From the NCBI GenBank assembly GCA_002269645.1, contig NIVC01003205.1:1-64000 (forward strand): a stretch of 64,000 nt of DNA, given 5' to 3'. Of the stretch, positions 6,401 through 36,984 are shown in pieces. Position 1 is the stretch's first letter. Every line of letters begins with the position of its first letter. Position numbers and translations under genes: made by a program. The notes under the pieces are model-generated. The model saw only the letters and a program-made list of their open reading frames with translations, was not told the DNA's origin and searched no databases. The stretch comes from Macrostomum lignano (lineage: Eukaryota).

Positions 6401-6881
6401 GCTCCTGGGCACAAAATTCGACAAGAGCGCATGGTTCAACTCATACTTGTACTCGGTTGGCTCGCTACTGACACTATTCAATTCCGCTATCAACTTTTTC
6501 ATTTACTGCGTTTGGAGTCGCAACTTTCGGCGCAACATGCTCTACGCCATGCGCCGGCGAAAGAAGCCACCGGCCCGGGTGATTCGCTTTGACTCCGACT
6601 CAGACCGCACCCGGCAGCTCTTGCTACAGCAGCAGCAGCAGCAGCTGCTGTGTGTTCGGCAGCCACCGGGTCCCGAGCAGCAGCGACATCAACAGCGCGC
6701 GGAGTCCCTTCCTATGCAAGTTATGCGCGCTTCACCGTTGAACAGTGCAGGCGGTGTCGCTGATGGCTGCGGTGTTGCTGGAGGCTCTGTTGATGAAAAC
6801 TGTGACAGTAGAAGTGACAGCAGTGACCGCAATCACAATTTGCAGCAGCAGCGCGTGCAAATCAATCCCCTGCGTGTGTAA
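3452..6881 (+). CDS. Class A (rhodopsin-like) neuropeptide GPCR, FMRFamide-receptor-like, 2 exons, ~452 aa
   Basis: Exon 1 3452-3701 (ATG, N-glycosylation sequons NDS/NAT/NGT, TM1 GLLLNSLSIVVL); phase-1 donor T|GTGAGC. Exon 2 5773-6881 follows ttgcag. Splicing restores the TM2 motif LALAIFD. TM3 ALDRY, TM7 NSAINFFIY, Q-rich C-tail. Confidence 0.9.
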
Positions 6882-7835: not shown

Positions 7836-8227
7836 AGTGATTGCCTTATCCCCTTAAACCACTGTTAACCGTCTTCGATCGCAAGAATTTTCAATCCAAC
7901 GAATCCAATACATGCCACTGCATGAAAGTGAAAGGCTTGTGCGACTGTCTTACTGAAAAATTGGATGGCCGTACAAATAACTGATGGCGTTTTATGTATC
8001 TTTGTCTTAAAAATGTATAAACGCGCTATTAAAATTAAATACTTAAAACCAGATAGAAAGCCGTAAGCATGTGATATGACTATAAATTGTATATGAAGTA
8101 AATTAAATTAAACAACTTTAAAAATAAGACCAAATTCGTGTGATCACACCATTTGTACTTCCACTTTCATTCGTTTTTGCACATTAGTAGTGTGAGTTGA
8201 TTCCTCATTCGGTGGCAGTGTGAATGA

Positions 8228-8520
8228 GCCTTTGGGTACACGAGCTATAGCCCTTCAAAATAAGCAGAAATGCCCCAAATGGCTTTTGGGTACACGAGCT
8301 ATAGCCCTTCAAAATAAGCAGAAATGCCCCAAATGGCTTTTGGGTACACGAGCTATAGCCCTTCAAAATAAACAGAAATGCTCTAAATGGCTTTTGGGTA
8401 CACGAGCTATAGCCCTTCAAAATAAGCAGAAATGCTCTAAATTGCTTTTGGGTACACGAGCTATACCCCTTCAAAAATGCCCCAAATGGCTTTTGGGTAC
8501 AGGAGTTCTAGCCCTTTAAA
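8228..8520. repeat. Minisatellite, 54-bp unit, ~5 copies
   Basis: gggtacacgagctatagcccttcaaaataagcagaaatgccccaaatggctttt at 8234, 8288, 8342, 8396, and a deleted copy at 8450. Confidence 0.95.
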
Positions 8521-8880
8521 ATAGAGATAAATAAGCTTTGTACAACTACAACAACAAAAATAAGGTCTATTTCGCCTGTACACAGTGTTTGAGTGCGGTT
8601 TTCAACCGGTGATATCTAAATTTTTCGGTATTCAACTTGTAGGATATGTCGGGAACACAATAGACTTCTAAAAATAGCCCTACAACAATGCAGTTTTCAA
8701 AAAATACTGCATTGGATAGCATAACTACCAGTGCCATAGACGTCCGCATGCTCAAACTTTTGTGGGATAATTAAAAAAACTTCATCTTGTCAAGCTTGAT
8801 GAAGTACGTAATATTGTATGGATTAAAAATTATGGACCATTAAGTTCTATGTTTTAGCAAAAAAGCAAACCCCCCCCCCA

Positions 8881-9060
8881 ATGTCTAATCCATCCGTACC
8901 GGCTGCAGAAGAGCTTGCTGCCGATCAGATCTTTATCGATTTCGAAATCGATAGCGAGTGGAAAAAGTGCATCTACAGTGACTGCAGCAGAGCGGGACCA
9001 CAGCGGTCTCGAAATAACTCTTCCACCGCCCTACCGGCGAGCTCAAGTCCTGTTCCAGTG
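8881..9060 (+). CDS. Possible upstream coding exon of the SUMO-like/P450 gene (join unresolved)
   Basis: ATG at 8881, open frame MSNPSVPAAEELAADQIFIDFEIDSEWKKC..., donor GTG|GTGAGG at 9061. This donor is phase 0, whereas exon 9239 needs phase 1 in its protein-like frame. Confidence 0.3.
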
Positions 9061-9238
9061 GTGAGGCTTTTTAAAATCTCCTGAAAATACACAACTCACG
9101 CCCACTGTAGGCCTAAAATGAGACTGCGAATAGTAAAGCCATTTAAATATAGTGTTCAAGAATCAAGAACTACTCCTAACTACTACTAGAGCTTACTAGT
9201 CTCGCCCAGTGCCAGTGGTTTAGATTGCTTCTAACCAG

Positions 9239-12200
9239 AGAAATACCCCTTACGGCCACAGCCAGAGCCGGGCTTCCTGCACGGCTGCCAGAAGACTTTG
9301 CGACAGTCCTTTGAGGCCACGAGCCTTCGTCGGGATGCTCACAGTGTCACCCTCTGGCTGTGCGTCAGGAAGCACAATTACGAGAACTACTTGTGGCAGT
9401 TTGTGCGCCTTGGCCGGTTCCACGGGAGCGAAGCGTACTCAAACTTGTCGCTGTGGACTGTTCAGCTGCGAGTTCGAATGCACCGACGAGTTCCCTTTGG
9501 TTGTCTTCTGCGAGGTCTTTGCTGCCGCTTCGGGCTCGGCTCGACAAGTGAGGCTCTTAAACTGTGTTTGGACGGCTTCTACGGCATGCCTGGCTTTGGC
9601 GACATTTTTGGAAACCATAGTGACGGTAAGCTGTGAGCCATGGCATATTATTTAACTTACTTTAAATTATATTATACTGAAGTAGTATATTAAAGTTCAT
9701 TTTTTACTTCACTACTTGTCGCACAAATTGAGTCACATCACATATTTACACGTTAGTGAAGGGGAGGCAAAGACAAGACAAACCGAGTGTGGCGATGGCA
9801 AGGCAGCGAAAAGCCAGAGGATGCAACCCTCAGACGATCGTATTTATTTCATGACTTGTTAAAACGAATTAAACTGATTAAAAATTATAAATAGCGAGGA
9901 AAAAAAATTCAACCGCGAGCAACCCCGCGCAGCCACAAAGGTGGCGGCCTAAATAGGCACGCGCACGCACCAACGCACCCACCACCCCACCAGACAGCCA
10001 GCACCCAAACAGCCCCCCTTGCACTAACAGCGGTTAGCCCTCGCGGGCTCGCGCAAACCGATGCATTAGTGAAGGGGAGGCAAAGACAAGACAAACCGAG
10101 TGTGGCGATGGCGAGGCAGCGAAAAGCCAGAGGATGCAACCCCAAGGCCAAACAAACAAATGAATGAACGAAGGAGAGAATTTACGAAACGGCGGAAATA
10201 AGGCTGGGGATAAGAACGGAAATAAAACTTTGAACACAAGCAAAAGTTACTCAAAGGCAACTCTCGTTAAAAGCACCAGCAAAACGCGAACCAGCCCGCA
10301 CAGAATCAGCAGATGGAAGGTAGGCAGTCACAGCATCACTTCGCCAGTCACCGATGCACTTCACCTCCTGAACAGATAGTCCGAGACGGTAGGCCCAGGT
10401 GGCACCACCTCTGCGCAGGCTGTGCGCTGAGAAAGAACGAGCGTCCTGCTCAGCAGTTGCTAGGCAGCGCTTGAGGAACCTGTCGAATCTTGAGGCAGAC
10501 AGGACAACAGAGGATCCGCTCGCCAACTGGTAGGAGAACACAGGCTGCCTGCAGCCAAGCTTGCTGACACGGAGGTGACCCTCTAGCGCAGCCACTGGGC
10601 AAAGCGGATGTCCTTCTTTTAGCCTTGGAAGCAACACCCGGTGCAGCTTCGCGCCGAACTGATTCGTCTTGCCATAACTGACAGAGAGCACAACCCCCTT
10701 CGGGTGGCGTTGAAAGGCTGAGACGGAAATCGGTGAAGCGGACTGCTGACTGGGCAGGAGACTGGAGCGCCGAAACATCCCCCACCAAGCAATAAGCGTC
10801 ACAAGCCAGCAGACTCTGTCAAGCGAACTGCTCGAGTTAAGCCGGTTTTTCACAGACAGCAGCATCGCAGGCGAGATCGGCAGCTTCCGTCTTGGTCGCT
10901 GGCCCATCCTCCGTTTAGCGCCGCGAACGAGCAGTGAGACCAGGTGGTGTTTTGTTAGGTCCTCAGCACCACAGGCTTTGAACCAGCTGGACAGTGCACT
11001 GACATGGACACGCAGACTGTTGAACGATCTCAGGCGGCATTCGACCAGGTGAGCCAGGTAGTTGAGTAGCACCGACCGGTCGGATCGAGCCGGGTTGGTC
11101 CCGTTCTCGTTGCAGAAGCTGTGCCAGGACCGGACGGCCGATGAGATCGCCCTGCGTGACTGCGGTGCGTATGCTGCGGCGAGGAGGCTGGAGGCGGCGG
11201 CGCCGAGGGTCGGCGTTGCAGGGAGGCGGCCTGTGAAAATAAAAAACGGGAGGCAAAAACAGAAAACGCGTGATCCGAAAACTCCACAGGGCAAACTGGT
11301 ACAGACCCGTAAACACGGAAAATAAAATTAAGCAACTCATGACGCGAGTGCAGGCGGGACCCTGCATCAGCAAACAGCTGATAAGCACCAGGAACGTGAA
11401 AGACCTCAAATTCAACGTCAAAACGCAGACAGAGCAACGCCACAGACTGCAGCAACCACATCAGACGCGAGTCCTTGGAGACACCTCGCCTTAGAATCCA
11501 ACACGCCGTCTCATTGTCGCAGTACACAGCAAGCCGACAACCAGCCAAGGATTGGCCCCATCTCAAAACAGCCAGCAATATAACCACAGCCTCCTTGTAA
11601 TTGATGCAGTAATTCTGAAAAACACCATTTGCGTCGATCTGCCAGTCAATAAAGCACCAATCACGAATCCCATCACCGTCACGGAGCACCGCCGCGGCGC
11701 CTGAAGACGACGAGTCAGTCTCTATGGCAACACAAGCCCTCGGCGAAGTCCACAGGCCAACACCGATGCGATGCTGCAAAGCCAACCGCCACCAGGAGAG
11801 GTGGTGCACCACGGAGGGACTAACAAGAACCCTGTCATGAGGCCGATGCAGCTTGTTAACAATGTCGATAAGAGGTCGGAGGAAAACTCTCCCGTGCCGA
11901 ACAACTTGCGACGCCCAGTTTAACTTGCCGATCAACTTCTGCAAACACGACTTTGACAGCCTTTTCTTCGAAGAGCAGAGGGATAAAACATGCAATAAGT
12001 CTTGGACTTTTTCGGCAGGAAGAGACATCTGGCCTGCCACGCTATCAAATAAAATGCCCAGAAAGGTCATCCGCGTTGTCGGCGGAACACACTTGCTACG
12101 GTTAACGGTGAAGCCTAGCCGCTCGAGCAGATCGATGAGATGGTTGTAGAACTTCCAGCAGGACTCCAGATCTCCACAAAAGGCGAAGTCATCCATGTAG

Positions 12201-15200
12201 GCCTCCATAGCGTAGAAACCATGCTTCAACATCATAAAACGCACAGCTTGGCTCAGCTCGTAAAAGCAGAAGACGGAAGCCGAAGCACCAAACGGGAGCC
12301 GCGTGTCGTACAGGTACACTGGCTGGCCCTCGCCTTGGAGCTGAATCTTCATGCCTGTGACCCGGTGGTCATCAGGGTGCACACCACATGAACGATATGC
12401 TTGCGACAGATCCACTTTGCACATGTACGCGCCGCTGTACAGCTTCGAGGCAAAGTTGCTGGCCGAAGTAAAACGCAACTTCCGTTTCGACTCAAAGAAA
12501 TCATTCACAGAGGCGCCAGTTGGCAGGCTGCAGTCGTGAATAAGGCGGATGGAAGACGAATCCGCCTTAGGGATCGCACCAAGGGCACTAACGATGAGCG
12601 GCCGGTTGCCTGCCTGGCAGCGCCTGTAGCGGTCCTGCTTGAGCTCCTGGCGCACCTGGGCCTCAACAGCTTGCTGGTGAATGGTAGCTGATCTGTGATT
12701 TGCCATCTCAGTGTGGTTCTTACAATCCATCACTTTATTAGTAATTCGAAAGCCATTCTTCACACCATCGAGCACGAACCTGACACGGTCCTCCGGCATC
12801 TCGGTCCCAGCCAGCTCTTCCCGCCAAACCGCAAACACAAGGTCGCTCGACAACTCAGTTGAACTCGGGTCACATAGGGGGAGCTCCCCCGTGGGGGCAC
12901 AGGAGGGCGACCCGACGGCAGACATTGAGTCCTGTGCCCCCACCTCGCACGCTAGTTTTTTGAAAATTGGCCCGGGTCCCCATCAGCGTGGGCTCGGGCT
13001 TCAGAGTGCGGCTGTGAGCACCTGCGGCACTGATGGGCGAAGCGGCAGTGAGTTCTGTTGCAGCCGCTAAGACTGTTGAAGTCGAAACAGACAGGTGGCT
13101 GCGTTCGCTTTTTAGGCGCTGTTGCGTTTATCATTTTTGTTGGTGCCATCAAGTGTGTTGCCACCAGACCCAGGTCTGCGCTAACAGCGCTCCACCGCGT
13201 TCCATCATGCTGGAGAAGCCGACATTCGTCATCATATCTCATGACTTTAGTGCGATCGAAGCCTAAATCTAGCAGGTCACCAATTCTAGCGTTATGTCGG
13301 AGATGATCGATCAACTCGGATGAATCGATTCTGCCATCAACAATGCGCAGCAGTTTGCCATCACGCAGCATTTGCACCAGTAAGTTACAGCTACCGGAGA
13401 TGAAATCGCCAAACGACAGTGACTCGGGACTGACGTGTCTCAACCTCTCTGGCTTTGCCGCTCCCACAACAGACTGGCTTCCTTGTCTCCGCTTACGCTC
13501 ACTGATAAAATCAACGACTCTGTACACCGCCGGCGCCTGAGCATGCGAAGTTGCAGCCCCAGCCTGCCCGAGTATACACTCGCCAACCAAATCATGCCAC
13601 TCACCGGGAGTCTGATCACGTTCTCTCGCAGCCGCCGTGCCACTGTGACGCGCTTCAGCGAGCTCGGCTTCGAGCTGAGCCTCTCTTTTTTTCAGGTCCA
13701 GCAACCGAATGCGCAGTTCAGTCTCTCGCAGCTGATCCTCGAGACCGCCTCCCGTCGCCGCCCGACCCTCGGCCGAGGCGCCCACCGCCGGTAGCATCTC
13801 GTCCTCAGGTGGAGCCAGACTTAGCTCGGGTGCGCCCGCATTCGTCGGTGATGTCTTGTCATCTTGAGCACGACGAGATGAGCCTCTGTCCTGCTCCAAC
13901 GCCTGCCGCTCAAGCTCCTTGGCAATGCTGAGTTTTAGACGACTTGTTAGCTCTTGCTTATTGCCATTAGTAGGCAGGCCGCGCTCACTAAGGGCTTCTC
14001 GTAGCGCTTTGTTAGTTGCGGGCAGTACAAGGCTATCTGCCATGATTCAGCAAAAAAATTCAACCGCGAGCAACCCCGCGCAGCCACAAAGGTGGCGGCC
14101 TAAATAGGCACGCGCACGCACCAACGCACCCACCACCCCACCAGACAGCCAGCACCCAAACAGCCCCCCCTTGCACTAACAGCGGTTAGCCCTCGCGGGC
14201 TCGCGCAAACCGATGCATAACAATGAAGATTGCGGTGCGAAAACAAAAAAATAGAAGATATTTAAGATTGACAAGCAAAAAATAGCTAGGAAATTTTAAC
14301 ATACTACTTGGGACTCTGAGCACTTCAACGTTGAGAACTCGAGTGATGCGGAGCTGTGCTCAAATTCGTGTGCACCACGCCAGAAGAGGCACCCTCTGCG
14401 TTCAACCAGGCCCAAGGCGGAGACATTCTACTATTGTCTGTCTCGAAAACCATAGACACAATCTACTATTGTCTACCTCCAAAATCATAGACACAATTAA
14501 TCTACTATTGCCTCTCGAAAACCATAGACACAATCTACCATTGTCTGCCTCCAAAAACATAGACACAATCTACTATTGTCTCTCGAAAACCATAGACACA
14601 ATCTACCATTGTCTGCCTCCAAAACCACAGACACAATCTACCATTGTCTGCCTCCAAAACCACAGACACAATCTACCCTTGTCTGCCTCCAAAAACATAG
14701 ACACAATCTACTATTGTCTCTCGAAAACCATAGACACAATCTACAATTGTCTGACTCCAAAACCATAGACACAATCTACCATGCATTGATGCCTCCAAAA
14801 CCACAGACACAATTGATCATTGTCTGCCTCCAAAACCATAGACACAATCTACCATTGTCTACCTCCAAAACCATAGACACAATCTACCATTGTCTGCCTC
14901 CAAAACCATAGACACAATCTACCCTTGTCTGCCTCCAAAACCATAGACACAATCTACCCTTGTCTACCTCCAAAACCATAGACACAATCTACCCTTGTCT
15001 GCCTCCAAAACCATAGACACAATCTACCCGTGTCTGCTTCAAAAAACACAGACACAATTTACCATTTACCATACAACCTCCAGAACTATGGACCCAATCT
15101 ACCCATTTTTTAGACTGGTGTCCCCGAATCGAGAGTTAAAAAAGTGGATGACAGACAAACTTGTGCTAAACAGTCCTGTTTTTCACATTTAGATGCAGTT

Positions 15201-15637
15201 CCGTGGATGGAAATCTCAAATCAATCAACGGCGGACAGCCTCCAGCTACACGATGGAGACATTATATTTGTCAGCTATTCAAACGAAAAACTCGAAAGCC
15301 TGGCTAGAGCTCGGAAGCGTGCTCTCGTAAATCAGTCGGCATCCAGCAACGTTGCTCGGTCTTTTGCTCCCAGAAGCAGTACAACCACTGATACTGACTC
15401 TATTTCTTTAGCACCATTCGGAAAGCTCTCAAAGCCAATCTCGCAGAATGCCATGCCACTGGCAGATTCGGTCTCGCCGCCGCCACTGCACATGGCGACA
15501 AAGATGCCTACGCAGCCTCGGGCCCGGCGCGCATCAGTGCCCGCGGCTCACCCGGGCCAGCCAATGTGCATCTCTGCCGCCGCCACCTCGGCAGACATCC
15601 AGTTCTGTGAGGCGGTTATCAACACCAGCAAAACAGA
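9239..15637 (+). CDS. Two exons (9239-9625, 15193-15637) encoding an integral SUMO-like (Rad60-SLD type) ubiquitin-fold domain plus a Ser/Pro-rich linker
   Basis: Acceptor ccag|9239; donor G|GTAAGC at 9626 (phase 1); acceptor tttag|15193 (phase 1). The spliced peptide TVQLRVRMHRRVPFGCLLRGLCCRFGL...LKLCLDG...WMEISNQSTADSLQLHDGDIIFV follows the SUMO pattern [24 protein letters not shown]...[28 protein letters not shown]. No terminal di-Gly. Confidence 0.7.
9753..9829 (-). repeat. Split direct repeat B2 (3' terminus of the element)
   Basis: ttagtgaaggggaggcaaagacaagac...gatgcaaccc; matches 10066-10142 except ggcaagg/ggcgagg. Confidence 0.95.
9901..10142 (-). repeat. Internal B1-A2 repeat junction
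   Basis: A2 (9901-10066) abuts B1 (10066-10142) at gatgcaTtagtg, which is the predicted circle-junction sequence. Confidence 0.95.
10251..11294 (-). CDS. Tyrosine recombinase (DIRS/Ngaro ORF3)
   Basis: Catalytic motifs GMFRRSS (R), K in SYGKTN, HSLRRGGA (HxxR), GDWRS, AVTAY (Y). N-terminal SAM-like core-binding region. Overlaps the RT/RH ORF by 265 nt. No AUG at the ORF start. Confidence 0.95.
   Translation of the reverse strand: MPCGVFGSRVFCFCLPFFIFTGRLPATPTLGAAASSLLAAAYAPQSRRAISSAVRSWHSFCNENGTNPARSDRSVLLNYLAHLVECRLRSFNSLRVHVSALSSWFKACGAEDLTKHHLVSLLVRGAKRRMGQRPRRKLPISPAMLLSVKNRLNSSSSLDRVCWLVTLIAWWGMFRRSSLLPSQQSASPISVSAFQRHPKGVVLSVSYGKTNQFGAKLHRVLLPRLKEGHPLCPVAALEGHLRVSKLGCRQPVFSYQLASGSSVVLSASRFDRFLKRCLATAEQDARSFSAHSLRRGGATWAYRLGLSVQEVKCIGDWRSDAVTAYLPSADSVRAGSRFAGAFNESCL
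11030..12943 (-). CDS. Reverse transcriptase-RNase H (DIRS-type pol)
   Basis: RLIHDCS, KVDLSQAY, RLPFGASAS, YMDD, MTFLGI; RNase H motifs IETDSS, INYKEA, CDNETA. Confidence 0.95.
   Translation of the reverse strand: MGAQDSMSAVGSPSCAPTGELPLCDPSSTELSSDLVFAVWREELAGTEMPEDRVRFVLDGVKNGFRITNKVMDCKNHTEMANHRSATIHQQAVEAQVRQELKQDRYRRCQAGNRPLIVSALGAIPKADSSSIRLIHDCSLPTGASVNDFFESKRKLRFTSASNFASKLYSGAYMCKVDLSQAYRSCGVHPDDHRVTGMKIQLQGEGQPVYLYDTRLPFGASASVFCFYELSQAVRFMMLKHGFYAMEAYMDDFAFCGDLESCWKFYNHLIDLLERLGFTVNRSKCVPPTTRMTFLGILFDSVAGQMSLPAEKVQDLLHVLSLCSSKKRLSKSCLQKLIGKLNWASQVVRHGRVFLRPLIDIVNKLHRPHDRVLVSPSVVHHLSWWRLALQHRIGVGLWTSPRACVAIETDSSSSGAAAVLRDGDGIRDWCFIDWQIDANGVFQNYCINYKEAVVILLAVLRWGQSLAGCRLAVYCDNETACWILRRGVSKDSRLMWLLQSVALLCLRFDVEFEVFHVPGAYQLFADAGSRLHSRHELLNFIFRVYGSVPVCPVEFSDHAFSVFASRFLFSQAASLQRRPSAPPPPASSPQHTHRSHAGRSHRPSGPGTASATRTGPTRLDPTGRCYSTTWLTWSNAA
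12865..12961 (-). promoter_or_regulatory. Predicted -1 programmed ribosomal frameshift signal (A_AAA_AAC plus stem/pseudoknot)
   Basis: Heptamer at 12961-12955, in frame and directly before the gag UAG; pol is in the -1 frame and open through the site; perfect 14-bp inverted repeat at 12943-12930/12904-12891. Confidence 0.8.
12952..14043 (-). CDS. Gag-like ORF1 with N-terminal SAP domain, coiled coil and C-terminal Cys/His zinc-finger region
   Basis: ATNKALREALSERGLPTNGNKQELTSRL fits the SAP consensus; heptad-like LEDQLRETELRIRLLDLKKREAQLEAEL; CFDFNSLSGCNRTHCRFAHQCRRCSQPH. Confidence 0.9.
   Translation of the reverse strand: MADSLVLPATNKALREALSERGLPTNGNKQELTSRLKLSIAKELERQALEQDRGSSRRAQDDKTSPTNAGAPELSLAPPEDEMLPAVGASAEGRAATGGGLEDQLRETELRIRLLDLKKREAQLEAELAEARHSGTAAARERDQTPGEWHDLVGECILGQAGAATSHAQAPAVYRVVDFISERKRRQGSQSVVGAAKPERLRHVSPESLSFGDFISGSCNLLVQMLRDGKLLRIVDGRIDSSELIDHLRHNARIGDLLDLGFDRTKVMRYDDECRLLQHDGTRWSAVSADLGLVATHLMAPTKMINATAPKKRTQPPVCFDFNSLSGCNRTHCRFAHQCRRCSQPHSEARAHADGDPGQFSKN
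14052..14218 (-). repeat. Split direct repeat A1 (5' terminus of the element)
   Basis: Identical to 9901-10066 apart from one extra C in the C-run. Confidence 0.95.
14421..15104. repeat. Minisatellite, 35-bp unit (34-bp variants), ~19 copies, intronic
   Basis: tgtctgcctccaaaaccatagacacaatctaccat; period 35 read at 14821/14856. Confidence 0.95.
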
Positions 15638-15870
15638 GTTGGTGCATTTACGACTTGGCTTTTCTTTCTTTGTCTATGCGGCTTTGACTTATGACCCCAG
15701 GAAAAAGATTTTCATACACGATACCTGGTTGATTCTTCAACCAGGCTTTAGCCACTTCATTCAGTGTGTCGGCTCTCATATTTCGTATCAATCGGATCAG
15801 ATTATTGAGATTTTCATTTACCAATTTTTATGATATCTCGTAAACATCTAACTGATTAACAAACAAACAG

Positions 15871-18366
15871 GTTAGACCAAAGCCTGGCTGAGGATGGCAT
15901 CGAGACAGAAGTGTTCGCAAAAGATGGCTGGGGCCTTCATCCCGGTGCACTAAATAAGCTACATCAAGCGCATTCAGACATTGGAGACCTCGTGCGCGTG
16001 TCCTATCCCAGCTCCAAGCGTACAGAGAAACTTGGCTTAGTGCTCACACCGGAGCTGATGACTTGGATGTTGGACGCTGCCAAAGATCACCGCACTCCAC
16101 TCATCCATCCACTGCTCCCGAAAATACGAGCAAAGGTGTTCAGGTGCGACACAGCCTCAGACGTTGATGCCGCCGATGGACTCGGAGCTGGCATCGGAGC
16201 TGGTAGAGGAGCTCTTGAGGAGCTGCGAAATTTCGCCAGCAAAGTTGACAGCATGCTGCGGGTCCGCTGCGCCGGCTCAGGAAGCTTCTTGGATATCTGG
16301 TCGCCAGAGAGTGCAGCCTATTTTGTCGTGGATACTTTCTTTGGTTCCTCGATCTGCAGCATCTATGGAATCGAGCGGGACCATCGCTTCCACTCGTACG
16401 CTGTGGACGCAGCGTTGCATGAGCTTGAAAAAGGTTTTGTGACATTCTTCAGCGGCAATTCCGGTAGTCAAGCAAAATTGCGTAAAGCCGACCTGGACAA
16501 AGCCTGGGAGAATCTCTATCGCCTGCACCCGACAGCCCAGGAGCTGGCTGCCGCTGAGCCATGTCATCATTTCAAGGATTTACTCAACAGAGCCCTAAAG
16601 AGTGCGTGCAACTGCTTGTTGACTGTTTGATTTACCATATTGTCCTAAGCAAAGCGCTATGAGCATAGACACTGGCACAGGGAACAGAACAGCAGTGCCC
16701 GTCCTAAGCAAAACGCTATGAGCATAGACACTGGCACAGGGAACAGAACAGCAGTGCCTGTCCTAACCAAAACGCTATGAGCATAGAAACTGGCACAGGG
16801 AACAGAACAGCAGTGCCCGTCCTAAGCAAAACGCTATGAGCATAGACACTGGCACAGGGGAACAGAACAGCAGTGCCTGTCCTAACCGGACCAAAACACT
16901 ATGAGCATAGACACTGGCACAGGGAACAGAATGGCAGCGCCCACGCCTCTTGTGTTCCACTTTAAAGTTGATAACCAAAATGCTCACTTTTAGTGGAAAC
17001 CGGGTCTGACCAATACAAGTCGCACCTCCAATCTAAACTAGCAGCAATAGCTTTATTTGTTATCTCAGAAAATTAACTCATGTATTTTCCAGATCCAAAT
17101 AAGTCTTGGAGAGCCTTTGTCGGCTGCAGCATCAACTGTCTCTATAGCGACTACAGTGCTAAGAAAGCAGCTTTCTGGGCAATTCACTATCTCATATCTC
17201 ACACAGCCGTGCAGGAGAGCCTGTTAGCCGAGATCGATTCCATGGCGACCGCAGCAAGACCGCACGAATTTCGGCGATTGACGCTCAAGGAGCTTGATGA
17301 GATGCCATTTCTTGGTGGGTGGCACTTGCTTTGATTCTATTGAATATTTCGCGAAGCTCAGAGTCAACTTTTCATTTCAGAGGCCTTCGTAAAAGAAGTT
17401 TACCGGCTCACGTCGGGGCAGTTCGTTAGCTTCAGAGCTGGAACTGACTTGTTGTTGCAGACGCAGAAGAACTCTGAAGGCATCTGCTTGCACAGCGGTG
17501 AAGAGATCGGGGTGCTGCTTCGTTCATTGAACATGGACCCCAGTCTGTTCAAAAATCCAGAGGTGAGTTTTTGGCTGTTAGTACTGAAAGTGCAGGTGAA
17601 CATAAATCTATGTTGTTAGTTATTCTGGGTCTAAATTACTCAGTACTAGCTTAAGATTAGTGATTACTTTTGACATTCGCTTCGATATAGTTATAAGTAA
17701 AAAAGCTAGCGAACTATTTAGCAGCATTCAGATCTTAAAAATCTAAAGTCATCTCATTCTTTTGGAATAGAAGATCATAATCCGGTGCGGTTTGCGAAGC
17801 TTAAAATACGGCCTGCTAAGTTACTTATTCAGGGGAGGAGGGTTGGTGCCGTACGTAAGGGTGGTGGTCTACTTGTAGAGTCTCGAAGTCAAAAGCAGAA
17901 CTTTTGAGATGTCGTTCAGACCTTACAATGCACACTCCGATCTCCTTGGCGGCAGCAATGACGCGACACCTTGAATCCTACTTGAAGTATCGTAAAACGA
18001 ATTCAATCCTAACTAGGATGATTTCTAGTGTGCTTCAACAAAGTCTTTTATTGCCGTACAGAAATGCGAATTCTCGTCCATTGTTCCACACAGGCGTTCC
18101 AGCCGCAGCGCTTTCTGTTTGAGACCCAGCATGCGGAGCTCCTGGCCCTGCCGTTCGGCTGTCTGTGGCCTCGCCGGCGCCTCGGGCTGTTGAAGCTTAA
18201 GCTGTTCTTGGTGCTGCTGCTGAGCCGGTGCCGCATTCGGGCTGATGAAGGCACAGGCGCTCAGGTTGACGCCAGCGCCTTCTGCGTTGATATTCTGCCC
18301 TGGACGGAGGACGTTGTCTTTCAGTTCCAGGCCAGGGAGCAGATGAGAGCGACATTTACGCTTTAG
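15871..18366 (+). CDS. Cytochrome P450-fold domain, CYP7/CYP8-like, with degenerate heme motif; 4 exons, ~468 aa
   Basis: Exons 15871-16601, 17093-17314, 17381-17562, 18094-18366; all GT-AG junctions are phase-compatible. I/J-helix AAFWAIHYLISHTAVQESLLAEID (cf. CYP8A1 AAFWLLLFLLKNPEA), ExxR KEVYR, DPSLFKNPE, PQRF, PFG. No in-frame ATG or TM anchor at the start, so an upstream exon is required. Confidence 0.88.
16642..16935. repeat. Minisatellite, 59-bp unit, ~5 copies, in a P450 intron
   Basis: gtcctaagcaaaacgctatgagcatagacactggcacagggaacagaacagcagtgccc at 16642, 16701, 16760, 16819, 16879; alternating variants. Confidence 0.95.
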
Positions 18367-18740
18367 TGTGACGCGGCTCTTTCACTAGCCTCATGTGAAA
18401 ATCAATCAGAGCTGAGCCCAATATTTTAAACTAATTGCGCCAGGTATTGCATATCTCCCTCCCTTTGCTTCTGTTCCGCCATATTTTTACGATATAGGTG
18501 TTAATTATCTTGTTACTATTCATTTCCTGTTCTGATTTGTCATGTAAAAGAGTAAGCAGCAGAAGGGCTATAGCATTTTATATAGAATATTGTTTTTTAC
18601 TATAGACGTCTATATTAGTTCAGTAGTTAGAGCAATAAAAAGGAATTTCAGCTACGGCTCATGTTTTCGGTAAGTGAAACTGTACGTGTGAACTTAAAAT
18701 CTGTCACTTTTATATCTACTAAGTCGGAATTTGTGTAGAG

Positions 18741-18984
18741 GGCTACTCACACCTGTCTCCCAGACTCAGTTTACTGGGATTTGAGTAGATGGCTACTCAC
18801 ACCTGTCTCCCAGACTCAGTTTACTGGGATTTGAGTAGAAGGCTACTCACACCTGTCTCCCAGACTCAGTTTACTGGGATTTGAGTAGAAGGCTACTCAC
18901 ACCTGTCTCCCAGACTCAGTTTACTGGGATTTGAGTAGATGGCTACTCACACCTGTCTCCCAGACTCAGTTTACTGGGATTTGA
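18741..18984. repeat. Minisatellite, 50-bp hairpin-forming unit, ~4.9 copies
   Basis: ggctactcacacctgtctcccagactcagtttactgggatttgagtagat at 18741, 18791, 18841, 18891, 18941. Confidence 0.95.
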
Positions 18985-20115: not shown

Positions 20116-23100
20116 CTAGCAGTAGCTGCAGGACGCTGGCCGGTGACCGCTCTGGTGCCGCGAGTCCGCCTGGGCGATCGAGCCGCTGGTTTGGAAGTTT
20201 TGCTTTGCCAGAAGCTTCCTGAAGATCATTGAATTGATAAGTCAAGTTTCAATCCATCAGCGCCGCTATTTAGGTCTTGGGTATTAATTATTATTAATAA
20301 CGGGGTATGATAGGGAATAAAAAAGAAACGAAGTTATATTGTTTCTTCAGCACTTCTTCATGATTTCGTTTACAACAAAAGCCATCAGCCATAGCCTCCT
20401 CCCCTCAGCCCTGCGAAGCCATTCAAACCATAGTCAGAAGCTGACCTAACTAGCACCAATCAGATCCCATGAGGCAAGTTGAGCAGCTATGTAATTCAGT
20501 AGTGCACTAAAATTGAGTTGTCATCATTCTGATTGTGTATTTGCCATCATGCTGATCGTGTATTTGCCATCATGCTGATCGTGTATTTGCCATCATGCTG
20601 ATCGTGTATTTGCCATCAATCTGATTGTGTATTTGCCATCATGCTGATCGTGTATTTGCCATCATGCTGATTGTGTGTTTGCCATCATGCTGATCGTGTA
20701 TTTGCCATCATGCTGATCGTGTATTTGCCATCAATCTGATTGTGTATTTGCCATCATGCTGATCGTGTATTTGCCATCATGCTGATTGTGTGTTTGCCAT
20801 CATGCTGATCGTGTATTTGCCAGCATGCTGATCGCGTATTTGCCATCATGCTGATCGTGTATTTGCCATCAATCTGATTGTGTATTTGCCATCATGCTGA
20901 TCGTGTATTTGCCATCATGCTGATCGTGTATTTGCCATCATGCTGATCGTGTATTTGCCATCATGCTGATCGTGTATTTGCCATCAATCTGATTGTGTAT
21001 TTGCCATCATGCTGATCGTGTATTTGCCATCATGCTGATTGTGTGTTTGCCATCATGCTGATCGTGTATTTGCCAGCATGCTGATCGTGTATTTGCCATC
21101 ATGCTGATCGTGTATTTGCGATCATGCTGATTGTGTATTTGGCATCATTCTGATCGTGTATTTGCCATCATGCTGATCGTGTATTTGCCATCAATTTTGC
21201 CATCATGCCATCATGCTGATAGTGTATTTGCCATCATGCTGATCGTGTATTTGCGATCATGCTGATTGTGTATTTGGCATCATGCTGATCGTGTATTTGC
21301 CATCATTCTGATCGTGTATTTGCCATCAATTTTGCCATCATGCCATCATGCTGATTGTGTATTTGCCATCATGCTAATCGTGTATTTGCGATCATGCTGA
21401 TTGTGTATTTGGCATCATGCTGATCGTGTATTTGCCATCATGCTGATCGTGTATTTGCCATCATTCTGATCGTGTATTTGCCATCATTCTGATTGTGTAT
21501 TTGCCATCATGCTGATCGTGTATTTGCCATCATTCTGATCGTGTATTTGCCATCATTCTGATCGTGTATTTGCCATCAATTTTGCCATCATGCCATCATG
21601 CTGATTGTGTATTTGCCATCATGCTAATCGTGTATTTGCGATCATGCTGATTGTGTATTTGCCATCATGCTGATCGTGTATTTGCCATCATGCTGATCGT
21701 GTATTTGCCATCATTCTGATCGTGTATTTGCCATCATTCTGATTGTGTATTTGCCATCATGCTGATCGTGTATTTGCCAGCATGCTGATCGTGTATTTGC
21801 CATCATTCTGATCGTGTATTTGCCATCAATTTTGCCATCATGCCATCATGCTGATTGTGTATTTGCCATCATGCTAATCGTGTATTTGCGATCATGCTGA
21901 TTGTGTATTTGCCATCATGCTGATCGTGTATTTGCCATCATTCTGATCGTGTATTTGCCATCATTCTGATCGTGTATTTGCCATGAATCTGATAGTGTAT
22001 TTGCCATCATGCTGATCGTGTATTTGCCATGAATCTGATCGTGTATTTGCCATCAATTTTGCCATCATGCTGATCGTGCATTTGCCATCATGCTGATCGT
22101 GTATTTGCCATCAATCTGATCGTGTATTTGCCATCATGCTGATCGTGTATTTGCCATCATGCTGATTGTGTATTTGCCATCATGCTGATCGTGTATTTGC
22201 CATCATGCTGATTGTGTATTTGCCATCATGCTGATCGTGTATTTGCCAGCATGCTGATCGTGTATTTGCCATCATGCTGATCGTGTATTTGCCATCATGC
22301 TGATCGTGCATTTGCCATCATGCTGATCGTGTATTTGCCATCATGCTGATCGTGTATTTGCCATCATTCTGATTGTGTATTTGCCATCATGCTGACCGTG
22401 TGATGACTGAAAACACCAACTGAAAACTGATGCGTCGCACGATATTTCAAGCTGATAAATACAAATTTACGTACTTTGTCCGGATCGCTGCAGCTTGGGC
22501 GAGATGGACCAGTGAAGGCTTGAATTTCATAGTTAACGTGGAAATCGTTATAGCACGCTTTTCAAGAGCATCTAGGCAGAAGAAGAAAGGCAACTTACCG
22601 TCCTATTGTTTGGAAGCAGAGGTCAACATTGTGCCCCGTCCTGGCGCTCGTCTCCATAAAACACATTATGTCGCACTCCTGTGGGCAGCATTGAAATCAA
22701 AATGACCCCCTTGATTTTCTGGATTGAAAACTCAGAATTAACCTGTGTGACCCACCTGAGCTAGCCGCTGCCCTTCGTGAGCGCTAACCTGCCTTTCAGA
22801 GTCCAGATCAGCCTTGTTGGCTACCAAAATGATGAATACATCCTCAGAGCCGTATTCGCGAATTTCCGTGAGCCAGGAGCGGACACTGCTGAATGTCTGG
22901 CGGCTGGTCAGATCGTAGAATAGCAGAATAGCTGTGCTCGGCAAAAAGTCGGATTGAGAGCTTCCAGCTCACTGAGACTGTTTTCATTGATGCAGTCACT
23001 CAACAGACCTATGCTTTCGCTTCTGCACTTGTCTAAATTAATTCTTCCCATCTCAGCCTCTTGCCTACCTGCCGGTTCTTCTTTATACTCGAATTTAAGC

Positions 23101-24526
23101 AAATGACCGCTGCCTTTTATCACGCTTACTTTTTAACTACTCGTAACTCTAGTCGAATGGTTTTGTCACTTTGGAACTACTAAAGTAGGAATTCACATTT
23201 CCATGATAGCAATACACTTGCGCATGCGCGTGAAAGAGGAAACGGTTTGTAATGCTCACAGTCAGCATCTCTGTAGTACGCACTGGTGATGCTCCGATAT
23301 CGCTCCGTACCGGCCGTGTCCCAGACCTGAAAGATGGGACACGTGCTGCATGGTTGGTCAATTGCATGAGCGCAAAGTTTTCAGCTCTCTGGGTTTAAAA
23401 TGTGGAAAGAATAAATATCTGCTCAAGAGAAAGATGATTCACATTCTAGAAGCTTCTATATTTTTCTTACTTCATGTTTCTTCATCAGAAATAGCTCGTA
23501 GTCCTGGGCAATACAGTAGAAACATATACGTATGCATCCTAGCAGCATAGATTTCGTCAAACTACATGTAGCTTTGTGAGCAATTGGAATTATTCTAATT
23601 GAGCTTAAAGTGAACTGTAAAAGTACGAGCGTATATTTTACCTGAAAGCGAACTCTGTAGCCATCCACTGGCAGTGTTTTGCTCTGGAATAAACATATAT
23701 ATAAATTACTGACTGAGGATCTGGGAGGCTGCCAAGCTGCAAAACGATTGCATGTACGAGTCTTGAAGCATAGAATTTGTAAAGACGGTCTCTTTGATCG
23801 TGGGCTCATAGTGCCCGGAGGGTGCAAGTGTCCCTGGGGGGGCCTTTCAGGTGAATGACCGCGCTCTTAGCCGCGTGGGCTGTCTGCGCAAGGTGAACTG
23901 ACCTGCGCAGGGAACTGGTAAATGGACCACTTGGTATCGCCATGAGCCTCAAAAGTTAGTGCCCCTACTATAGTGTGACCGATTTAATTTTTTAACATTC
24001 TACATCTACATTTCAGCAACATGAAACATGAATTGGCTCGAAAGGTTCCAATGGGGAAGTCTCGGCAATAGAAAAGCTGTGACACATATATATGCCCCAG
24101 GCCGCCGAAACATCGTCATAAAATGGACGGGAAAACCTCGTCAGGAAGAAATGAGATGCTCGCTGAAAAAATAGCACCTCATAGATCGTTCTCCATCATC
24201 TATTAAGTTAATTTGCATGAGACGCACATCTTAGTATGCCTTAAAAGATTTAAGAACTGAGAGTAAGAAGGTGAAAAAATACAGCGAACCCTGTAGTCGA
24301 CCCCGACCGTGCTGATGAAAGTGCTGCCGGGAAACTTGGCGTCCTTGAACTGGTGCATAAAGCTGGTCTTGCCGGTGCCGCTGTCGCCAACCAGCATCAC
24401 CTTGCACGATACATCGAAGGGATCGATGCTGATAGACTTCTTCAGCAAGCACCGGCCTGGCTCCTCCTCTGCGTCCGAGTCGCCCGGCAGGGCAAACCGA
24501 ACTCCCGATGCTTCCGAGGCCAGTTC
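20116..24526 (-). CDS. Rab26/Rab37-like small GTPase (5' end not located), 6 exons
   Basis: Exons 24526-24290, 23683-23642, 23326-23260, 22931-22756, 22678-22599, 20218-20116; all phases match. KVMLVGDSGTGKT, STVGVDYR, WDTAGTERYRS, NKAD, ETSAR, C-terminal ...ASCSYC*. FKDAKFPGSTFISTVG is Rab26/37-like. Confidence 0.9.
20518..22401. repeat. Satellite-like array, 23-bp unit, ~80 copies, in the last Rab intron
   Basis: ttgccatcatgctgatcgtgtat, with recurring variants (atcaatctgatt, cattctgatc, gcgatcatg, aattttgccatcatgcc). Confidence 0.97.
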
Positions 24527-25800: not shown

Positions 25801-25954
25801 CCCCCCCCTCCACAAATTCGATGGTGCTGCTAAGCGGTGCTGGTGTATAGTAGTTTTCTTTCTGTAACGCCTGGAAACACTTATGACTGCGAATTGTTTT
25901 TTGTAGTCCTTTAGTATTTTTATATGCAATTAATTAAGTATTGCATATATTGCA

Positions 25955-36570: not shown

Positions 36571-36869
36571 TTGCTTGTAGATGCCAGTCTTGAATGTTTT
36601 GTCAATCGTCTATAAGGTATAGACAGAAGAGATAGACAGAAGATATTTCTCTCAGAACAGAAATATAGAAATGTCAGGTGTCAGATCTGCTATTGTCTTA
36701 ATTCAACCATTCTCTATATATATTCTCTCTGTCTCTCTCTATTTATCTCTGTTTCTCTCTCTATATTGATATCTCTCTCCCTTTGTCTCTTTTTATATGT
36801 ATCTCTAATCTCTCTCCCTTTGTCTCTTTTTATATGTATCTCTAATCTCTCTGTTTCTATCTCTCTCTA

Positions 36870-36984
<115 letters not shown>

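What the first reader, a model, noticed from the sequence alone, without database searches (positions are those of the whole stretch)
9239..18366. Predicted chimeric host gene: SUMO-like domain fused to a soluble cytochrome P450 fold
The P450 frame is closed by TAA at 15857 and lacks an ATG or TM anchor before its conserved start, so it needs an upstream exon. The nearest coding exon ends ~230 bp away, where composition turns T-rich; donor GA|GTTGGT (15638, phase 2) matches acceptor aaacag|G (15871, phase 2). That exon completes a SUMO-like fold begun at 9239-9625. The model is >=745 aa: SLD + Ser/Pro linker + P450. Established: animal P450s normally begin with a membrane anchor or mitochondrial presequence, and integral SLDs are known from Rad60/Esc2/NIP45. 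I do not recognise this combination. The 15638 donor is only moderately strong.
Basis: inference. Interest (0 to 1): 0.84.

Follow-up and report, generated by a model that had tools for sequence, protein, structure and literature searches.

The report
SUMO-like domain fused to cysteine-less P450
A flatworm (Macrostomum lignano) gene really does join a SUMO-like domain to a membrane-anchor-less cytochrome P450 fold that has lost its haem-binding cysteine; this domain combination was not found described, and the gene sits in GenBank only as a "hypothetical protein".

Summary
The window is GenBank NIVC01003205.1 (Macrostomum lignano), bases 1-64000. The finding coincides with the annotated gene BOX15_Mlig033662g1 (8881-18366, 798 aa, "hypothetical protein").

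**Gene model.** They are kept in two other genomic copies. The 5' end needs correcting: exon 2 starts at 9262, not 9239, and an ATG exon at 8881-9060 was missed.

**SUMO-like domain.** Pfam does not detect it. It is supported by:
- a profile of its family, whose top ~45 of the 60 listed PDB matches are SUMO entries;
- hhalign against SUMO2 at 88.7% probability, against ubiquitin at 0.2%;
- an AlphaFold model (pLDDT 87) whose top 27 Foldseek matches are all SUMO/Smt3 entries.

It belongs to a family of small standalone proteins seen so far almost only in M. lignano. They share the same three-exon structure.

**P450 half.** It is related to the CYP7/CYP8 group. It lacks the membrane anchor, and tryptophan sits where the axial cysteine should be.

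**Selection and verdict.** Copies show purifying selection (dN/dS about 0.22). I read this as a real fusion gene encoding a soluble, probably non-monooxygenase P450-fold protein carrying a non-conjugatable SUMO mimic. Its function is unknown.

The parts
8881..9060 (+). Exon 1. Holds the ATG and 60 codons of an acidic, Ser/Pro-rich N-terminus; donor CCAGTG|gtgagg.
   Evidence: Identical to the start of PAA52634.1.
9262..9625 (+). Exon 2 (residues 61-181 plus 1 nt). Holds the N-terminal helix, strand 1, two inserted helices, strand 2, helix 1 and strand 3 of the SUMO-like domain. Acceptor ccacag|CC, donor GTGACG|gtaagc.
9295..9625 (+). First part of the region homologous to the standalone M. lignano SUMO-like-domain family (residues 72-181).
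9626..15192 (+). Intron 2 (5567 bp here; 600 bp in copy g3 and 846 bp in copy g2). It is enlarged by a retroelement insertion and a 35-bp tandem array.
15193..15323 (+). Second part of the SUMO-like domain family region (residues 182-225). Holds the PWMEIS loop, the last strand (IIFVSY) and a C-terminal helix. There is no Gly-Gly.
15324..15637 (+). Linker (residues 226-329 plus 2 nt), rich in Ser, Ala and Pro (15%, 15% and 11%). It ends at donor AACAGA|gttggt.
   Evidence: It is the fastest-evolving part (3 nonsynonymous and 2 synonymous changes).
15638..15870 (+). Intron 3, the fusion intron (233 bp, T-rich, GT..AG, no poly(A) signal). If it were retained, the frame would run on to TGA at 15831-15833.
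15871..16601 (+). Exon 4, the start of the P450 fold. It has no membrane anchor, no PPLVPG hinge and no in-frame ATG before Met393.
17093..17314 (+). Exon 5, the I-helix region of the P450 fold.
17381..17562 (+). Exon 6, with the K-helix ExxR motif (EVYR, 17395-17406) and the following strands.
18094..18366 (+). Exon 7. Holds the PQRF meander motif (18103-18114), the degenerate Cys-pocket, the L-helix, the C-terminus and the TAG stop.
18166..18168 (+). TGG codon, Trp733, at the position of the haem-ligating cysteine (FGCLWPRRR against FGSLCPGKR or YGVLCPG in the nearest relatives). One base away from TGC or TGT.
   Evidence: The same residue is present in all five database copies.
9745..14215 (-). 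Intact tyrosine-recombinase (DIRS/PAT-like) retrotransposon lying inside intron 2. It is not part of the gene product and is absent from the other two copies.

Best explanation
**Shown.**
- 8881-18366 is one seven-exon gene of Macrostomum lignano, Mlig033662.g1.
- Its 798-aa product has four parts: an acidic N-terminus; a roughly 150-residue SUMO-like beta-grasp domain with two inserted helices, a long loop and no C-terminal Gly-Gly; a roughly 105-residue Ser/Ala/Pro-rich linker; and a complete P450 fold related to CYP7/CYP8.
- The P450 fold has neither a membrane anchor nor an axial cysteine; Trp733 sits in the cysteine's place.

**Inferred with good support: origin.** The gene arose when a three-exon gene of the Macrostomum SUMO-like-domain family lost its stop. 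Its last exon acquired a donor that splices into a 5'-truncated P450 gene. Exons 1-3 have the same two intron positions as the standalone paralogues.

**Inferred: state of the P450 fold.**
- The protein is cytosolic or nuclear and soluble.
- The P450 fold is kept intact (ExxR and PxRF retained, dN/dS about 0.13), but it can no longer work as a haem-thiolate monooxygenase.
- It therefore most likely serves as a ligand-binding or scaffold module. Lipids or sterols are a guess from its CYP7/8 ancestry.

**Inferred, weakest step: role of the SUMO-like domain.** It cannot be cleaved or conjugated. It would act as a built-in SUMO mimic that docks the protein onto partners that read SUMO surfaces (SIM-containing proteins or Ubc9).

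**My estimates.** Single real gene 0.9; fusion origin 0.75; not a haem-thiolate enzyme 0.7; SUMO-mimic docking 0.3.
For: **Gene model**
- The window's protein is identical to PAA52634.1, whose gene range is 8881-18366 on NIVC01003205.1. That record is identical to the window over bases 1-28366.
- This annotation was built from RNA-seq with StringTie/TACO, a de novo transcriptome, TBONE cutting at mapped spliced-leader and poly(A) sites, and TransDecoder ORFs (PMC5730564).
- Copies g2 and g3 keep all seven exons, all GT-AG sites and intact ORFs.

**Constraint (window copy against g3)**
- Exons differ at 0.79% of sites with no indel.
- Introns differ at 1.87% with 7 indels (Fisher p = 0.0057).
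- dN/dS is 0.22 (binomial p = 0.0013). For the P450 part it is 0.13. The SUMO-like domain has 0 nonsynonymous and 2 synonymous changes.

**SUMO-like domain**
- The top ~45 of the 60 listed PDB matches to the family profile are SUMO, Smt3 or SUMO fusions (single-copy chains E from 0.002).
- hhalign to SUMO2 gives 88.7% probability, P 2.6e-6, over 57 columns from strand 2 to the last strand. To ubiquitin it gives 0.2%.
- AlphaFold2 with 9 family sequences gives pLDDT 87 and pTM 0.79.
- Foldseek against the PDB: 72 hits at E<=0.001; the top 27 are all SUMO/Smt3 entries, and only a few ubiquitin-like folds appear lower in the 50 listed. Target-normalised TM-scores reach 0.86.

**Family and origin**
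- There are at least 8 divergent standalone paralogue groups of 218-372 aa, all from M. lignano apart from one transcript-like contig from an unidentified sequencing run.
- Mlig015520 and Mlig022324 have introns at the same two places as exons 1-3 here.

**P450 half**
- Pfam gives 67 bits.
- The nearest relatives are an M. lignano P450 (E 1.8e-30) and a Littorina 'CYP7A1-like' protein.
- The subfamily profile hits CYP7A1 at 2e-60, CYP8B1 at 2e-55 and prostacyclin synthase at 1e-47, against 4e-21 for the next family.
- The cysteine of the relatives aligns with Trp733, or with Arg or Trp in alignments to PDB P450s.
- No hydrophobic anchor is present.

**Spliced leader**
- Joined at 15871, the leader's terminal ATG is out of frame and meets a stop after 7 codons.
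Against: - I saw no read-level transcript data. Support for the 15637->15871 junction is indirect: an annotation built from RNA-seq, matching phases, and conservation in three copies.
- Intron 3 differs between copies no more than the exons do (2 of 233 sites), so divergence cannot show that it is non-coding.
- The dN/dS figures rest on only 19 substitutions.
- The structural model uses a 9-sequence alignment.
- Pfam finds no Rad60-SLD or ubiquitin domain in any family member.
- A cysteine lies two residues before Trp733 (FGC), so an unorthodox haem ligation cannot be excluded.
- No orthologue from another species was found, so the age of the fusion and of the Cys->Trp change is unknown.
- There is no evidence at all on binding partners, ligands or expression site.
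Confidence: 0.55

Rival explanations
1. There are two adjacent genes, a SUMO-like-domain gene ending at the 15833 stop and a separate P450 gene. They were merged by transcript assembly because both lie in one polycistronic transcription unit. The P450 mRNA would start by spliced-leader trans-splicing.
For: M. lignano has many operon-like units resolved by trans-splicing. The standalone paralogues end in the exon that corresponds to exon 3. The donor GTTGGT is not strong. In-frame AG sites at 15893 and 15905 could in principle accept the leader's ATG.
Against: - The annotation pipeline cuts units at mapped leader sites, yet it kept one gene in all three copies.
- The translated ORF crosses the junction, which needs intron 3 removed.
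- The leader ATG at the real acceptor 15871 is out of frame.
- The first internal Met is residue 393, which would delete the start of the fold.
- Intron 3 has no poly(A) signal.
- The phases match and both splice sites are kept in three copies.
Confidence: 0.07
2. The fusion is real and the P450 domain is still a working haem enzyme. It would use another axial ligand, for example Cys731 two residues upstream. It might be an isomerase-type enzyme like prostacyclin synthase, which needs no reductase and so no membrane.
For: - The domain is under purifying selection (dN/dS 0.13).
- ExxR and PxRF are retained.
- A new Cys sits at position -2, where the relatives have Val or Ser.
- The subfamily is related to CYP8A1, prostacyclin synthase. 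That this enzyme works without a redox partner is established knowledge.
Against: - The ligand position holds Trp in all copies.
- The glycine after it is Arg (PRRR against PGKR), so the Cys-pocket is reshaped.
- From my own knowledge, I know of no P450 that ligates haem through a cysteine shifted by two residues.
Confidence: 0.15
3. The gene is a young chimeric gene with no function of its own. It is transcribed, but the P450 half is a decaying duplicate.
For: The Cys ligand and the anchor are lost. The P450 part is only 29% identical to its closest relative. No orthologue was found outside M. lignano.
Against: - Three copies keep a 2397-nt ORF with no indel or stop, while their introns carry 7 indels.
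- dN/dS is 0.22, significantly below 1.
- At 29-41% identity to its paralogues the fusion is old, yet the frame is intact.
Confidence: 0.1
4. The N-terminal module is a beta-grasp domain that resembles SUMO only by convergence or through model bias. It has nothing to do with SUMO-type interactions.
For: Pfam finds nothing. E-values against single SUMO chains are only 0.002-0.05. The domain carries large insertions, and the AlphaFold alignment is shallow.
Against: Sequence profile and predicted structure independently pick SUMO rather than ubiquitin. The family's invariant R-x-G and D-G residues fall on the RQG and DG of SUMO2 in the alignment.
Confidence: 0.1

Closest known systems
CYP7/CYP8 group of animal cytochromes P450 (CYP7A1, CYP8B1, prostacyclin synthase CYP8A1)
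   Same: It has the P450 fold with ExxR and PxRF. The subfamily profile hits these structures far better than any other P450 (2e-60 to 1e-47, against 4e-21 for the next family). The nearest named relative is 'cytochrome P450 7A1-like' from Littorina.
   Different: There is no N-terminal membrane anchor or PPLVPG hinge. The axial Cys is replaced by Trp. It is only 20-29% identical to its relatives. It carries about 330 N-terminal residues unrelated to P450.
SUMO (SUMO1/2/3, Smt3)
   Same: The beta-grasp is predicted with target-normalised TM-scores up to 0.86. There is profile similarity from strand 2 to the last strand at 28% identity, including the RQG- and DG-like motifs.
   Different: It is not a free modifier: there is no Gly-Gly, and the domain is internal. 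It has two helices inserted between strands 1 and 2, a loop of about 40 residues after strand 3, and flanking helices.
Integral SUMO-like-domain proteins Rad60 / Esc2 / NIP45
   Same: A non-conjugatable SUMO-like domain is built into a larger protein. That these domains bind Ubc9 or SUMO-pathway partners is established knowledge.
   Different: Those proteins have two tandem SLDs at the very C-terminus and N-terminal SIMs. Here there is a single domain followed by 570 residues. There is no Pfam Rad60-SLD hit, and the N-terminal IFIDFEID stretch does not fit the SIM consensus as I recall it.
Standalone SUMO-like-domain family of M. lignano (Mlig015520, Mlig022324, Mlig027574, Mlig014754, Mlig010594, Mlig006860, Mlig027033; all 'hypothetical protein')
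   Same: The domain is 25-42% identical over about 150 residues. Intron positions are identical in the two paralogues checked.
   Different: Those genes stop about 80 residues after the domain. This one reads on into a P450.
Natural P450 fusion proteins (P450 BM3-type reductase fusions, ferredoxin or dioxygenase-P450 fusions) and cysteine-less P450 homologues used as helper proteins (EryCII/DesVIII type). Both are recalled from my own knowledge and were not tested here.
   Same: In the first group a P450 fold is joined to another domain in one polypeptide. In the second a P450 fold is kept without the haem cysteine for a non-catalytic role.
   Different: The partner domain here is neither redox nor catalytic. 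The helper proteins are bacterial and are not fused to a ubiquitin-like domain.

Membership tests
Cytochrome P450 superfamily (PF00067) | Match to the Pfam p450 model above its gathering score | tested here: met
   67.4 bits against a cut-off of 22.8, over residues 271-432 of the P450 part.
Cytochrome P450 superfamily (PF00067) | K-helix ExxR and meander PERF-type motif | tested here: met
   EVYR (residues 653-656) and PQRF (712-715). E, R, R and F are invariant in the alignment with the relatives.
Cytochrome P450 superfamily (PF00067) | Cys-pocket FxxGxRxCxG with the axial haem-thiolate cysteine | tested here: not met
   FGCLWPRRRLG. The relatives' LCPG cysteine, and the ICPG of CYP7A1, align with Trp733. 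PDB alignments place Trp or Arg there. The same holds in all five database copies.
Cytochrome P450 superfamily (PF00067) | Haem binding and a 450-nm CO spectrum | not testable with these tools
   This needs purified protein.
Animal microsomal or mitochondrial P450 | N-terminal membrane anchor or mitochondrial presequence | tested here: not met
   The highest 19-residue hydropathy mean is 1.59, and that stretch is the L-helix. The relatives score 2.06-2.38 at their N-termini. The N-terminus here is acidic.
CYP7/CYP8 group | Closest sequence relationship to CYP7A1, CYP8B1 or CYP8A1 | tested here: inconclusive
   The profile of this domain plus three relatives hits them at 2e-60 to 1e-47. The domain alone gives only 30-36 bits to several animal P450 families, with CYP7A1 the longest match.
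SUMO (conjugatable modifier) | SUMO-type beta-grasp fold | tested here: met
   Model pLDDT 87. The top 27 Foldseek PDB hits are all SUMO/Smt3 entries, with E from 3.5e-5 and target-normalised TM-scores up to 0.86. This is predicted, not solved.
SUMO (conjugatable modifier) | Sequence similarity to SUMO rather than to other ubiquitin-like proteins | tested here: met
   The top ~45 of the 60 listed matches of the family profile against the PDB are SUMO entries. hhalign gives 88.7% probability to SUMO2 and 0.2% to ubiquitin.
SUMO (conjugatable modifier) | C-terminal Gly-Gly exposed by processing | tested here: not met
   After the last strand the sequence runs IIFVSYSNEKLESLARAR... and continues for about 570 residues.
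Rad60 / Esc2 / NIP45 family | Two tandem SUMO-like domains at the C-terminus | tested here: not met
   One domain (residues ~88-210) is followed by the linker and the P450.
Rad60 / Esc2 / NIP45 family | Match to Pfam Rad60-SLD (PF11976) | tested here: not met
   No hit at E<=1 for this protein or E<=10 for nine family members. UniProt names one paralogue 'Rad60-SLD domain-containing protein', but names of that batch look unreliable.
Rad60 / Esc2 / NIP45 family | Binding of the domain to Ubc9 or SUMO-pathway partners | not testable with these tools
   This needs a binding assay.
M. lignano standalone SUMO-like-domain family (unnamed) | Homology over the ~150-residue domain and a shared exon structure | tested here: met
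   E 8e-28 to 2e-5 against eight representatives. W-T, R-x-G, DGF-G and P are invariant. Introns fall at the same two positions in Mlig015520 and Mlig022324.

The most novel reading that the evidence does not exclude
A SUMO-derived domain family expanded in Macrostomum. One member captured a CYP7/8-type P450 that then gave up haem-thiolate chemistry. The result is a soluble, haem-free P450-fold lipid or sterol sensor that a built-in SUMO mimic plugs into the SUMO or Ubc9 interaction network. This would be a new way of using both folds.
Probability: 0.15. Interest if true: 0.75.

Novelty: new variant of a known kind. Interest (0 to 1): 0.5.

Why it matters
**Why it is unusual**
- P450s are among the best-catalogued enzyme families, and animal members are almost always membrane-anchored haem-thiolate enzymes.
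- This one is soluble, lacks the cysteine, is still under purifying selection and is welded to a SUMO-like domain.
- If it functions, it would be an animal example of a P450 fold reused for a non-monooxygenase role.
- It would also be an example of an integral SUMO-like domain outside the Rad60/NIP45 type.

**Evolutionary interest**
- It is a clean case of gene birth by fusion. The standalone form of the upstream partner still exists in the same genome with the same intron positions.

**Testability and limits**
- M. lignano has RNAi, in situ hybridisation and transgenesis, so function is testable.
- The gene is known from one species only, and nothing is known of its function.

Tried and rejected
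**N-terminal half: searches that found nothing**
- Pfam on the N-terminal half gave no hit at E<=1.
- Pfam on nine family members gave no ubiquitin-like hit.
- A single-sequence search of the PDB found nothing at E<=10.
- Single-sequence AlphaFold gave pLDDT 37 and was unusable.
- A word-index search with the family profile found only one more M. lignano paralogue.

**Fused architecture elsewhere**
- Only M. lignano copies appeared in the 5.8-billion-protein search.
- The exhaustive HMMER search of 1.84 billion representatives found none among the 150 best hits listed.

**Transcript-level evidence**
- No assembled RNA contig carries exactly these proteins.

**Spliced leader**
- There is no leader gene in the window.
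- A 20-mer near-match at 25942 is chance.

**Origin of the fusion intron**
- The one P450 paralogue with a genome record (Mlig023623) has no intron at the fusion point. Simple shuffling at an existing intron is therefore not shown.
- I looked in intron 3 for remains of a P450 anchor. The hydrophobic read-through peptide is explained by the T-rich composition and is in the wrong frame, so I rejected it.

**SIM in exon 1**
- IFIDFEID does not fit the consensus as I recall it, so I make no claim.

**Expression and literature**
- Mlig033662 does not occur in the searchable full texts or in the supplements held for three of four papers tried; the fourth had none held.
- A literature search for a SUMO-like domain together with P450 returned nothing relevant.

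**Rfam**
- The window has no match.

Full report
**What the window is.** The first 28,366 bases are identical to GenBank NIVC01003205.1 of the Macrostomum lignano Mlig_3_7 assembly. The gene called there at 8881-18366 encodes PAA52634.1, 'hypothetical protein BOX15_Mlig033662g1', 798 aa. That protein is identical to the product I built from the window. The finding is therefore an annotated but uncharacterised gene.

**Check of the observation.** I translated all frames and read every junction. The gene has seven exons, all with GT-AG introns:

| Exon | Window coordinates |
|---|---|
| 1 | 8881-9060 |
| 2 | 9262-9625 |
| 3 | 15193-15637 |
| 4 | 15871-16601 |
| 5 | 17093-17314 |
| 6 | 17381-17562 |
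| 7 | 18094-18366 |

9625|GTAAGC joins tttag|AT at 15193 in phase 1. AACAGA|GTTGGT at 15637 joins aaacag|G at 15871 and forms Glu330.
- The P450 frame is closed upstream by TAA at 15857. It has no in-frame ATG before Met393.
- Intron 3 is 233 bp, 37% T, and has no poly(A) signal.
- Two details were wrong. Exon 2 starts at 9262 rather than 9239. An ATG exon at 8881-9060, preceded by in-frame stops, was missed.

**Is it one gene?**
- The GenBank annotation was made from RNA-seq. It used StringTie and TACO assemblies merged with a de novo transcriptome, cut at mapped spliced-leader and poly(A) sites by TBONE. ORFs were called by TransDecoder (PMC5730564). An ORF that crosses Glu330 therefore implies transcripts with intron 3 removed.
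- Three genomic copies (g1 is the window, g2 is L004, g3 is L001) carry the same 798-aa model, the same seven exons and the same splice sites.
- Two UniProt models derived from another annotation carry the same junction peptide ...INTSKTELDQSLAEDG....
- The M. lignano spliced leader ends in ATG (PMC8629364). Joined at 15871 it is out of frame and stops after seven codons.
- I could not inspect reads or long cDNAs, so the junction evidence is strong but indirect.

**Selective constraint.** Between the window copy and g3:
- Exons differ at 19 of 2397 sites (0.79%) with no indel.
- The alignable introns differ at 1.87% and carry 7 indels (Fisher p = 0.0057).
- Nei-Gojobori dN/dS is 0.22. Eight nonsynonymous and 11 synonymous changes give a binomial p of 0.0013 against neutrality.
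- For the P450 part dN/dS is 0.13. The SUMO-like domain has 0 nonsynonymous and 2 synonymous changes. The linker is the least constrained.
- The counts are small, but they point away from a decaying pseudogene.

**The N-terminal domain.** Direct searches with the single sequence all failed:
- Pfam found nothing.
- A PDB sequence search found nothing.
- Single-sequence AlphaFold gave pLDDT 37.

The exhaustive HMMER search of 1.84 billion representatives gave the key lead.
- Residues about 55-247 match eight small proteins of 218-372 aa with E from 8e-28 to 2e-5.
- Seven are M. lignano 'hypothetical proteins': Mlig015520, 022324, 027574, 014754, 010594, 006860 and 027033. One comes from a transcript-like contig of sequencing run SRR30276812, organism not identified.
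- Their alignment has invariant W-T, R-x-G, D-G-F-x-G and P residues.

Tests with a profile of this family:
- Against PDB sequences, the top ~45 of the 60 matches listed are SUMO2/3, SUMO1, Smt3, Drosophila SUMO or SUMO fusions. Single-copy chains have E from 0.002.
- hhalign to human SUMO2 gives 88.7% probability and P 2.6e-6 over 57 columns from strand 2 to the last strand. To ubiquitin it gives 0.2%.
- AlphaFold2 with the nine-sequence alignment gives pLDDT 87 and pTM 0.79.

The model, in protein numbering:

| Element | Residues |
|---|---|
| helix | 73-86 |
| strand 1 | 88-96 |
| two inserted helices | 100-124 |
| strand 2 | 126-134 |
| helix 1 | 139-150 |
| strand 3 | 159-162 |
| long loop | 163-204 |
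| last strand | 205-210 |
| C-terminal helix | 213-224 |

- Foldseek against the PDB returns 72 hits at E<=0.001. The top 27 are all SUMO/Smt3 entries, and only a few other ubiquitin-like folds appear lower in the 50 listed. Target-normalised TM-scores reach 0.86.
- There is no Gly-Gly after the last strand. The domain cannot be a conjugatable modifier.
- It is also not a Rad60/NIP45-type protein, because there is one domain and it is not C-terminal.

**Origin.** The standalone paralogues Mlig015520 (L005) and Mlig022324 (L006) have three coding exons.
- Their introns fall before the ...PE|P... start of the domain exon and inside ...DIFxxxx|DACPWME... These are the same two positions as introns 1 and 2 here.
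- Their third exon ends with a stop about 80 residues after the junction. Here exon 3 runs on for 148 codons and is spliced to the P450.
- The simplest reading is a fusion of a family member with a 5'-truncated P450 gene.
- The one P450 paralogue with a genome record (Mlig023623, L007) has no intron at the fusion point, but it shares the intron just before the K-helix. How intron 3 arose is therefore open.

**The P450 half.**
- Pfam p450 scores 67 bits.
- The best non-self hit is an M. lignano P450 of 499 aa (29% identity, E 1.8e-30). Next come another M. lignano P450 and a Littorina 'cytochrome P450 7A1-like' protein.
- A profile of these four hits CYP7A1 (2e-60), CYP8B1 (2e-55) and prostacyclin synthase (1e-47), well ahead of CYP51 (4e-21).
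- The relatives begin with a hydrophobic anchor and the EPPLVPG hinge. Here that segment is absent, and the fold starts just after the junction.
- ExxR (EVYR) and PxRF (PQRF) are kept.
- In the Cys-pocket the relatives read (F/Y)G(S/V)LCP(G/A), where this protein reads FGCLWPR. The axial cysteine is Trp733 (TGG, 18166-18168), one base from a Cys codon. It is the same in all five database copies. Alignments to solved P450s likewise put Trp or Arg at the ligand position.
- By the defining feature of the family, this is not a haem-thiolate protein. A cysteine two residues earlier leaves a small door open.

**How it most likely works.**
- Shown: one gene, and a soluble product made of a SUMO-like domain, a flexible linker and a cysteine-less P450 fold, with both domains constrained.
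- Inferred, P450 fold: it is kept as a binding or scaffold module rather than as a monooxygenase.
- Inferred, SUMO-like domain: it cannot be released, and it presents SUMO-like surfaces to partners. The best-conserved stretch aligns with strand 2 and helix 1 of SUMO. From my own knowledge these form the SIM-binding groove. The invariant D of DGF aligns with the acidic residue that I recall as used for binding the back of Ubc9. Both points are leads from memory, not tests.
- I put the SUMO-mimic docking idea at about 0.3.

**Comparison and novelty.**
- Integral SUMO-like domains, P450 fusion proteins and cysteine-less P450 homologues are each known kinds.
- I found this combination neither in the literature search nor in the protein searches.
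- The gene model itself is not new. The new points are the recognition of the domain, of its family, of the lost cysteine and of the fusion origin.
- I rate it a new variant of a known kind, of moderate interest. The limits are that it is seen in one species and that nothing is known about function or expression.

**Surroundings.**
- Intron 2 holds a recent, intact tyrosine-recombinase retrotransposon on the minus strand (9745-14215). It is absent from the other two copies.
- Several tandem arrays in and around the gene vary in copy number between copies.
- The neighbouring genes are ordinary: a GPCR, an Arf-like GTPase, a TB2/DP1/HVA22 protein and a Cys-loop channel.

Noticed in passing
window 9745-14215 (- strand): An intact DIRS/PAT-like tyrosine-recombinase retrotransposon sits inside intron 2. 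It has a SAP/gag-like ORF at 12952-14043, an RT+RNase H ORF at 11030-12943 and a recombinase ORF at 10251-11294. Its split direct repeats (9753-9829 = 10066-10142; 9901-10066 = 14052-14218) are 99-100% identical. It is absent from gene copies g2 and g3, so the insertion is recent.
   Followed up: partly
window 14423-15066, 16642-16942, 18729-18984, 8223-8523: Tandem arrays of 35, 59, 50 and 54 bp lie in introns 2 and 4 and in both flanks of the gene. Copy number differs between the genomic copies; for example intron 4 is 234 bp longer here than in g3.
   Followed up: partly
window 20518-22401 and 28339-29224: There are two large minisatellites: a 23-bp unit in about 80 copies and a 40-bp unit in about 22 copies. 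The first lies within the span of the Arf/Ras-like GTPase gene (20116-24397, - strand).
   Followed up: no
L005 10001-12070, L006 10001-11795 and other M. lignano loci: A family of at least eight divergent small proteins with the same SUMO-like domain, all annotated 'hypothetical protein'. In the searches run here it appears only in M. lignano, plus one contig from sequencing run SRR30276812 (L002). It has no Pfam family.
   Followed up: partly
UniProt names returned for P0002, P0003, P0005, P0155, P0165-P0167: The names given to M. lignano A0A1I8... entries (FERM, protein kinase, Spt5-NGN, SH2, TF-B3, UAS) do not fit the sequences and look unreliable. The name 'Rad60-SLD domain-containing protein' on paralogue A0A1I8GFI7 may or may not be meaningful.
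   Followed up: no
window 5778-6881 (+), 30022-30699 (-), 44679-45983 (+): Long ORFs with Pfam hits to a rhodopsin-type GPCR, TB2/DP1/HVA22 and a Cys-loop ligand-gated channel. These are ordinary neighbouring host genes.
   Followed up: no
window 36724-36984 and 55382-55754: (TC)n and (TGAG)n microsatellites. The second explains the GC-skew spike at 55-56 kb.
   Followed up: no
L004 (copy g2) against the window and L001 (g3): The g2 protein shares the g3 residues in its first 300 residues and the g1 residues in the P450 half. This suggests recombination or gene conversion between copies.
   Followed up: no
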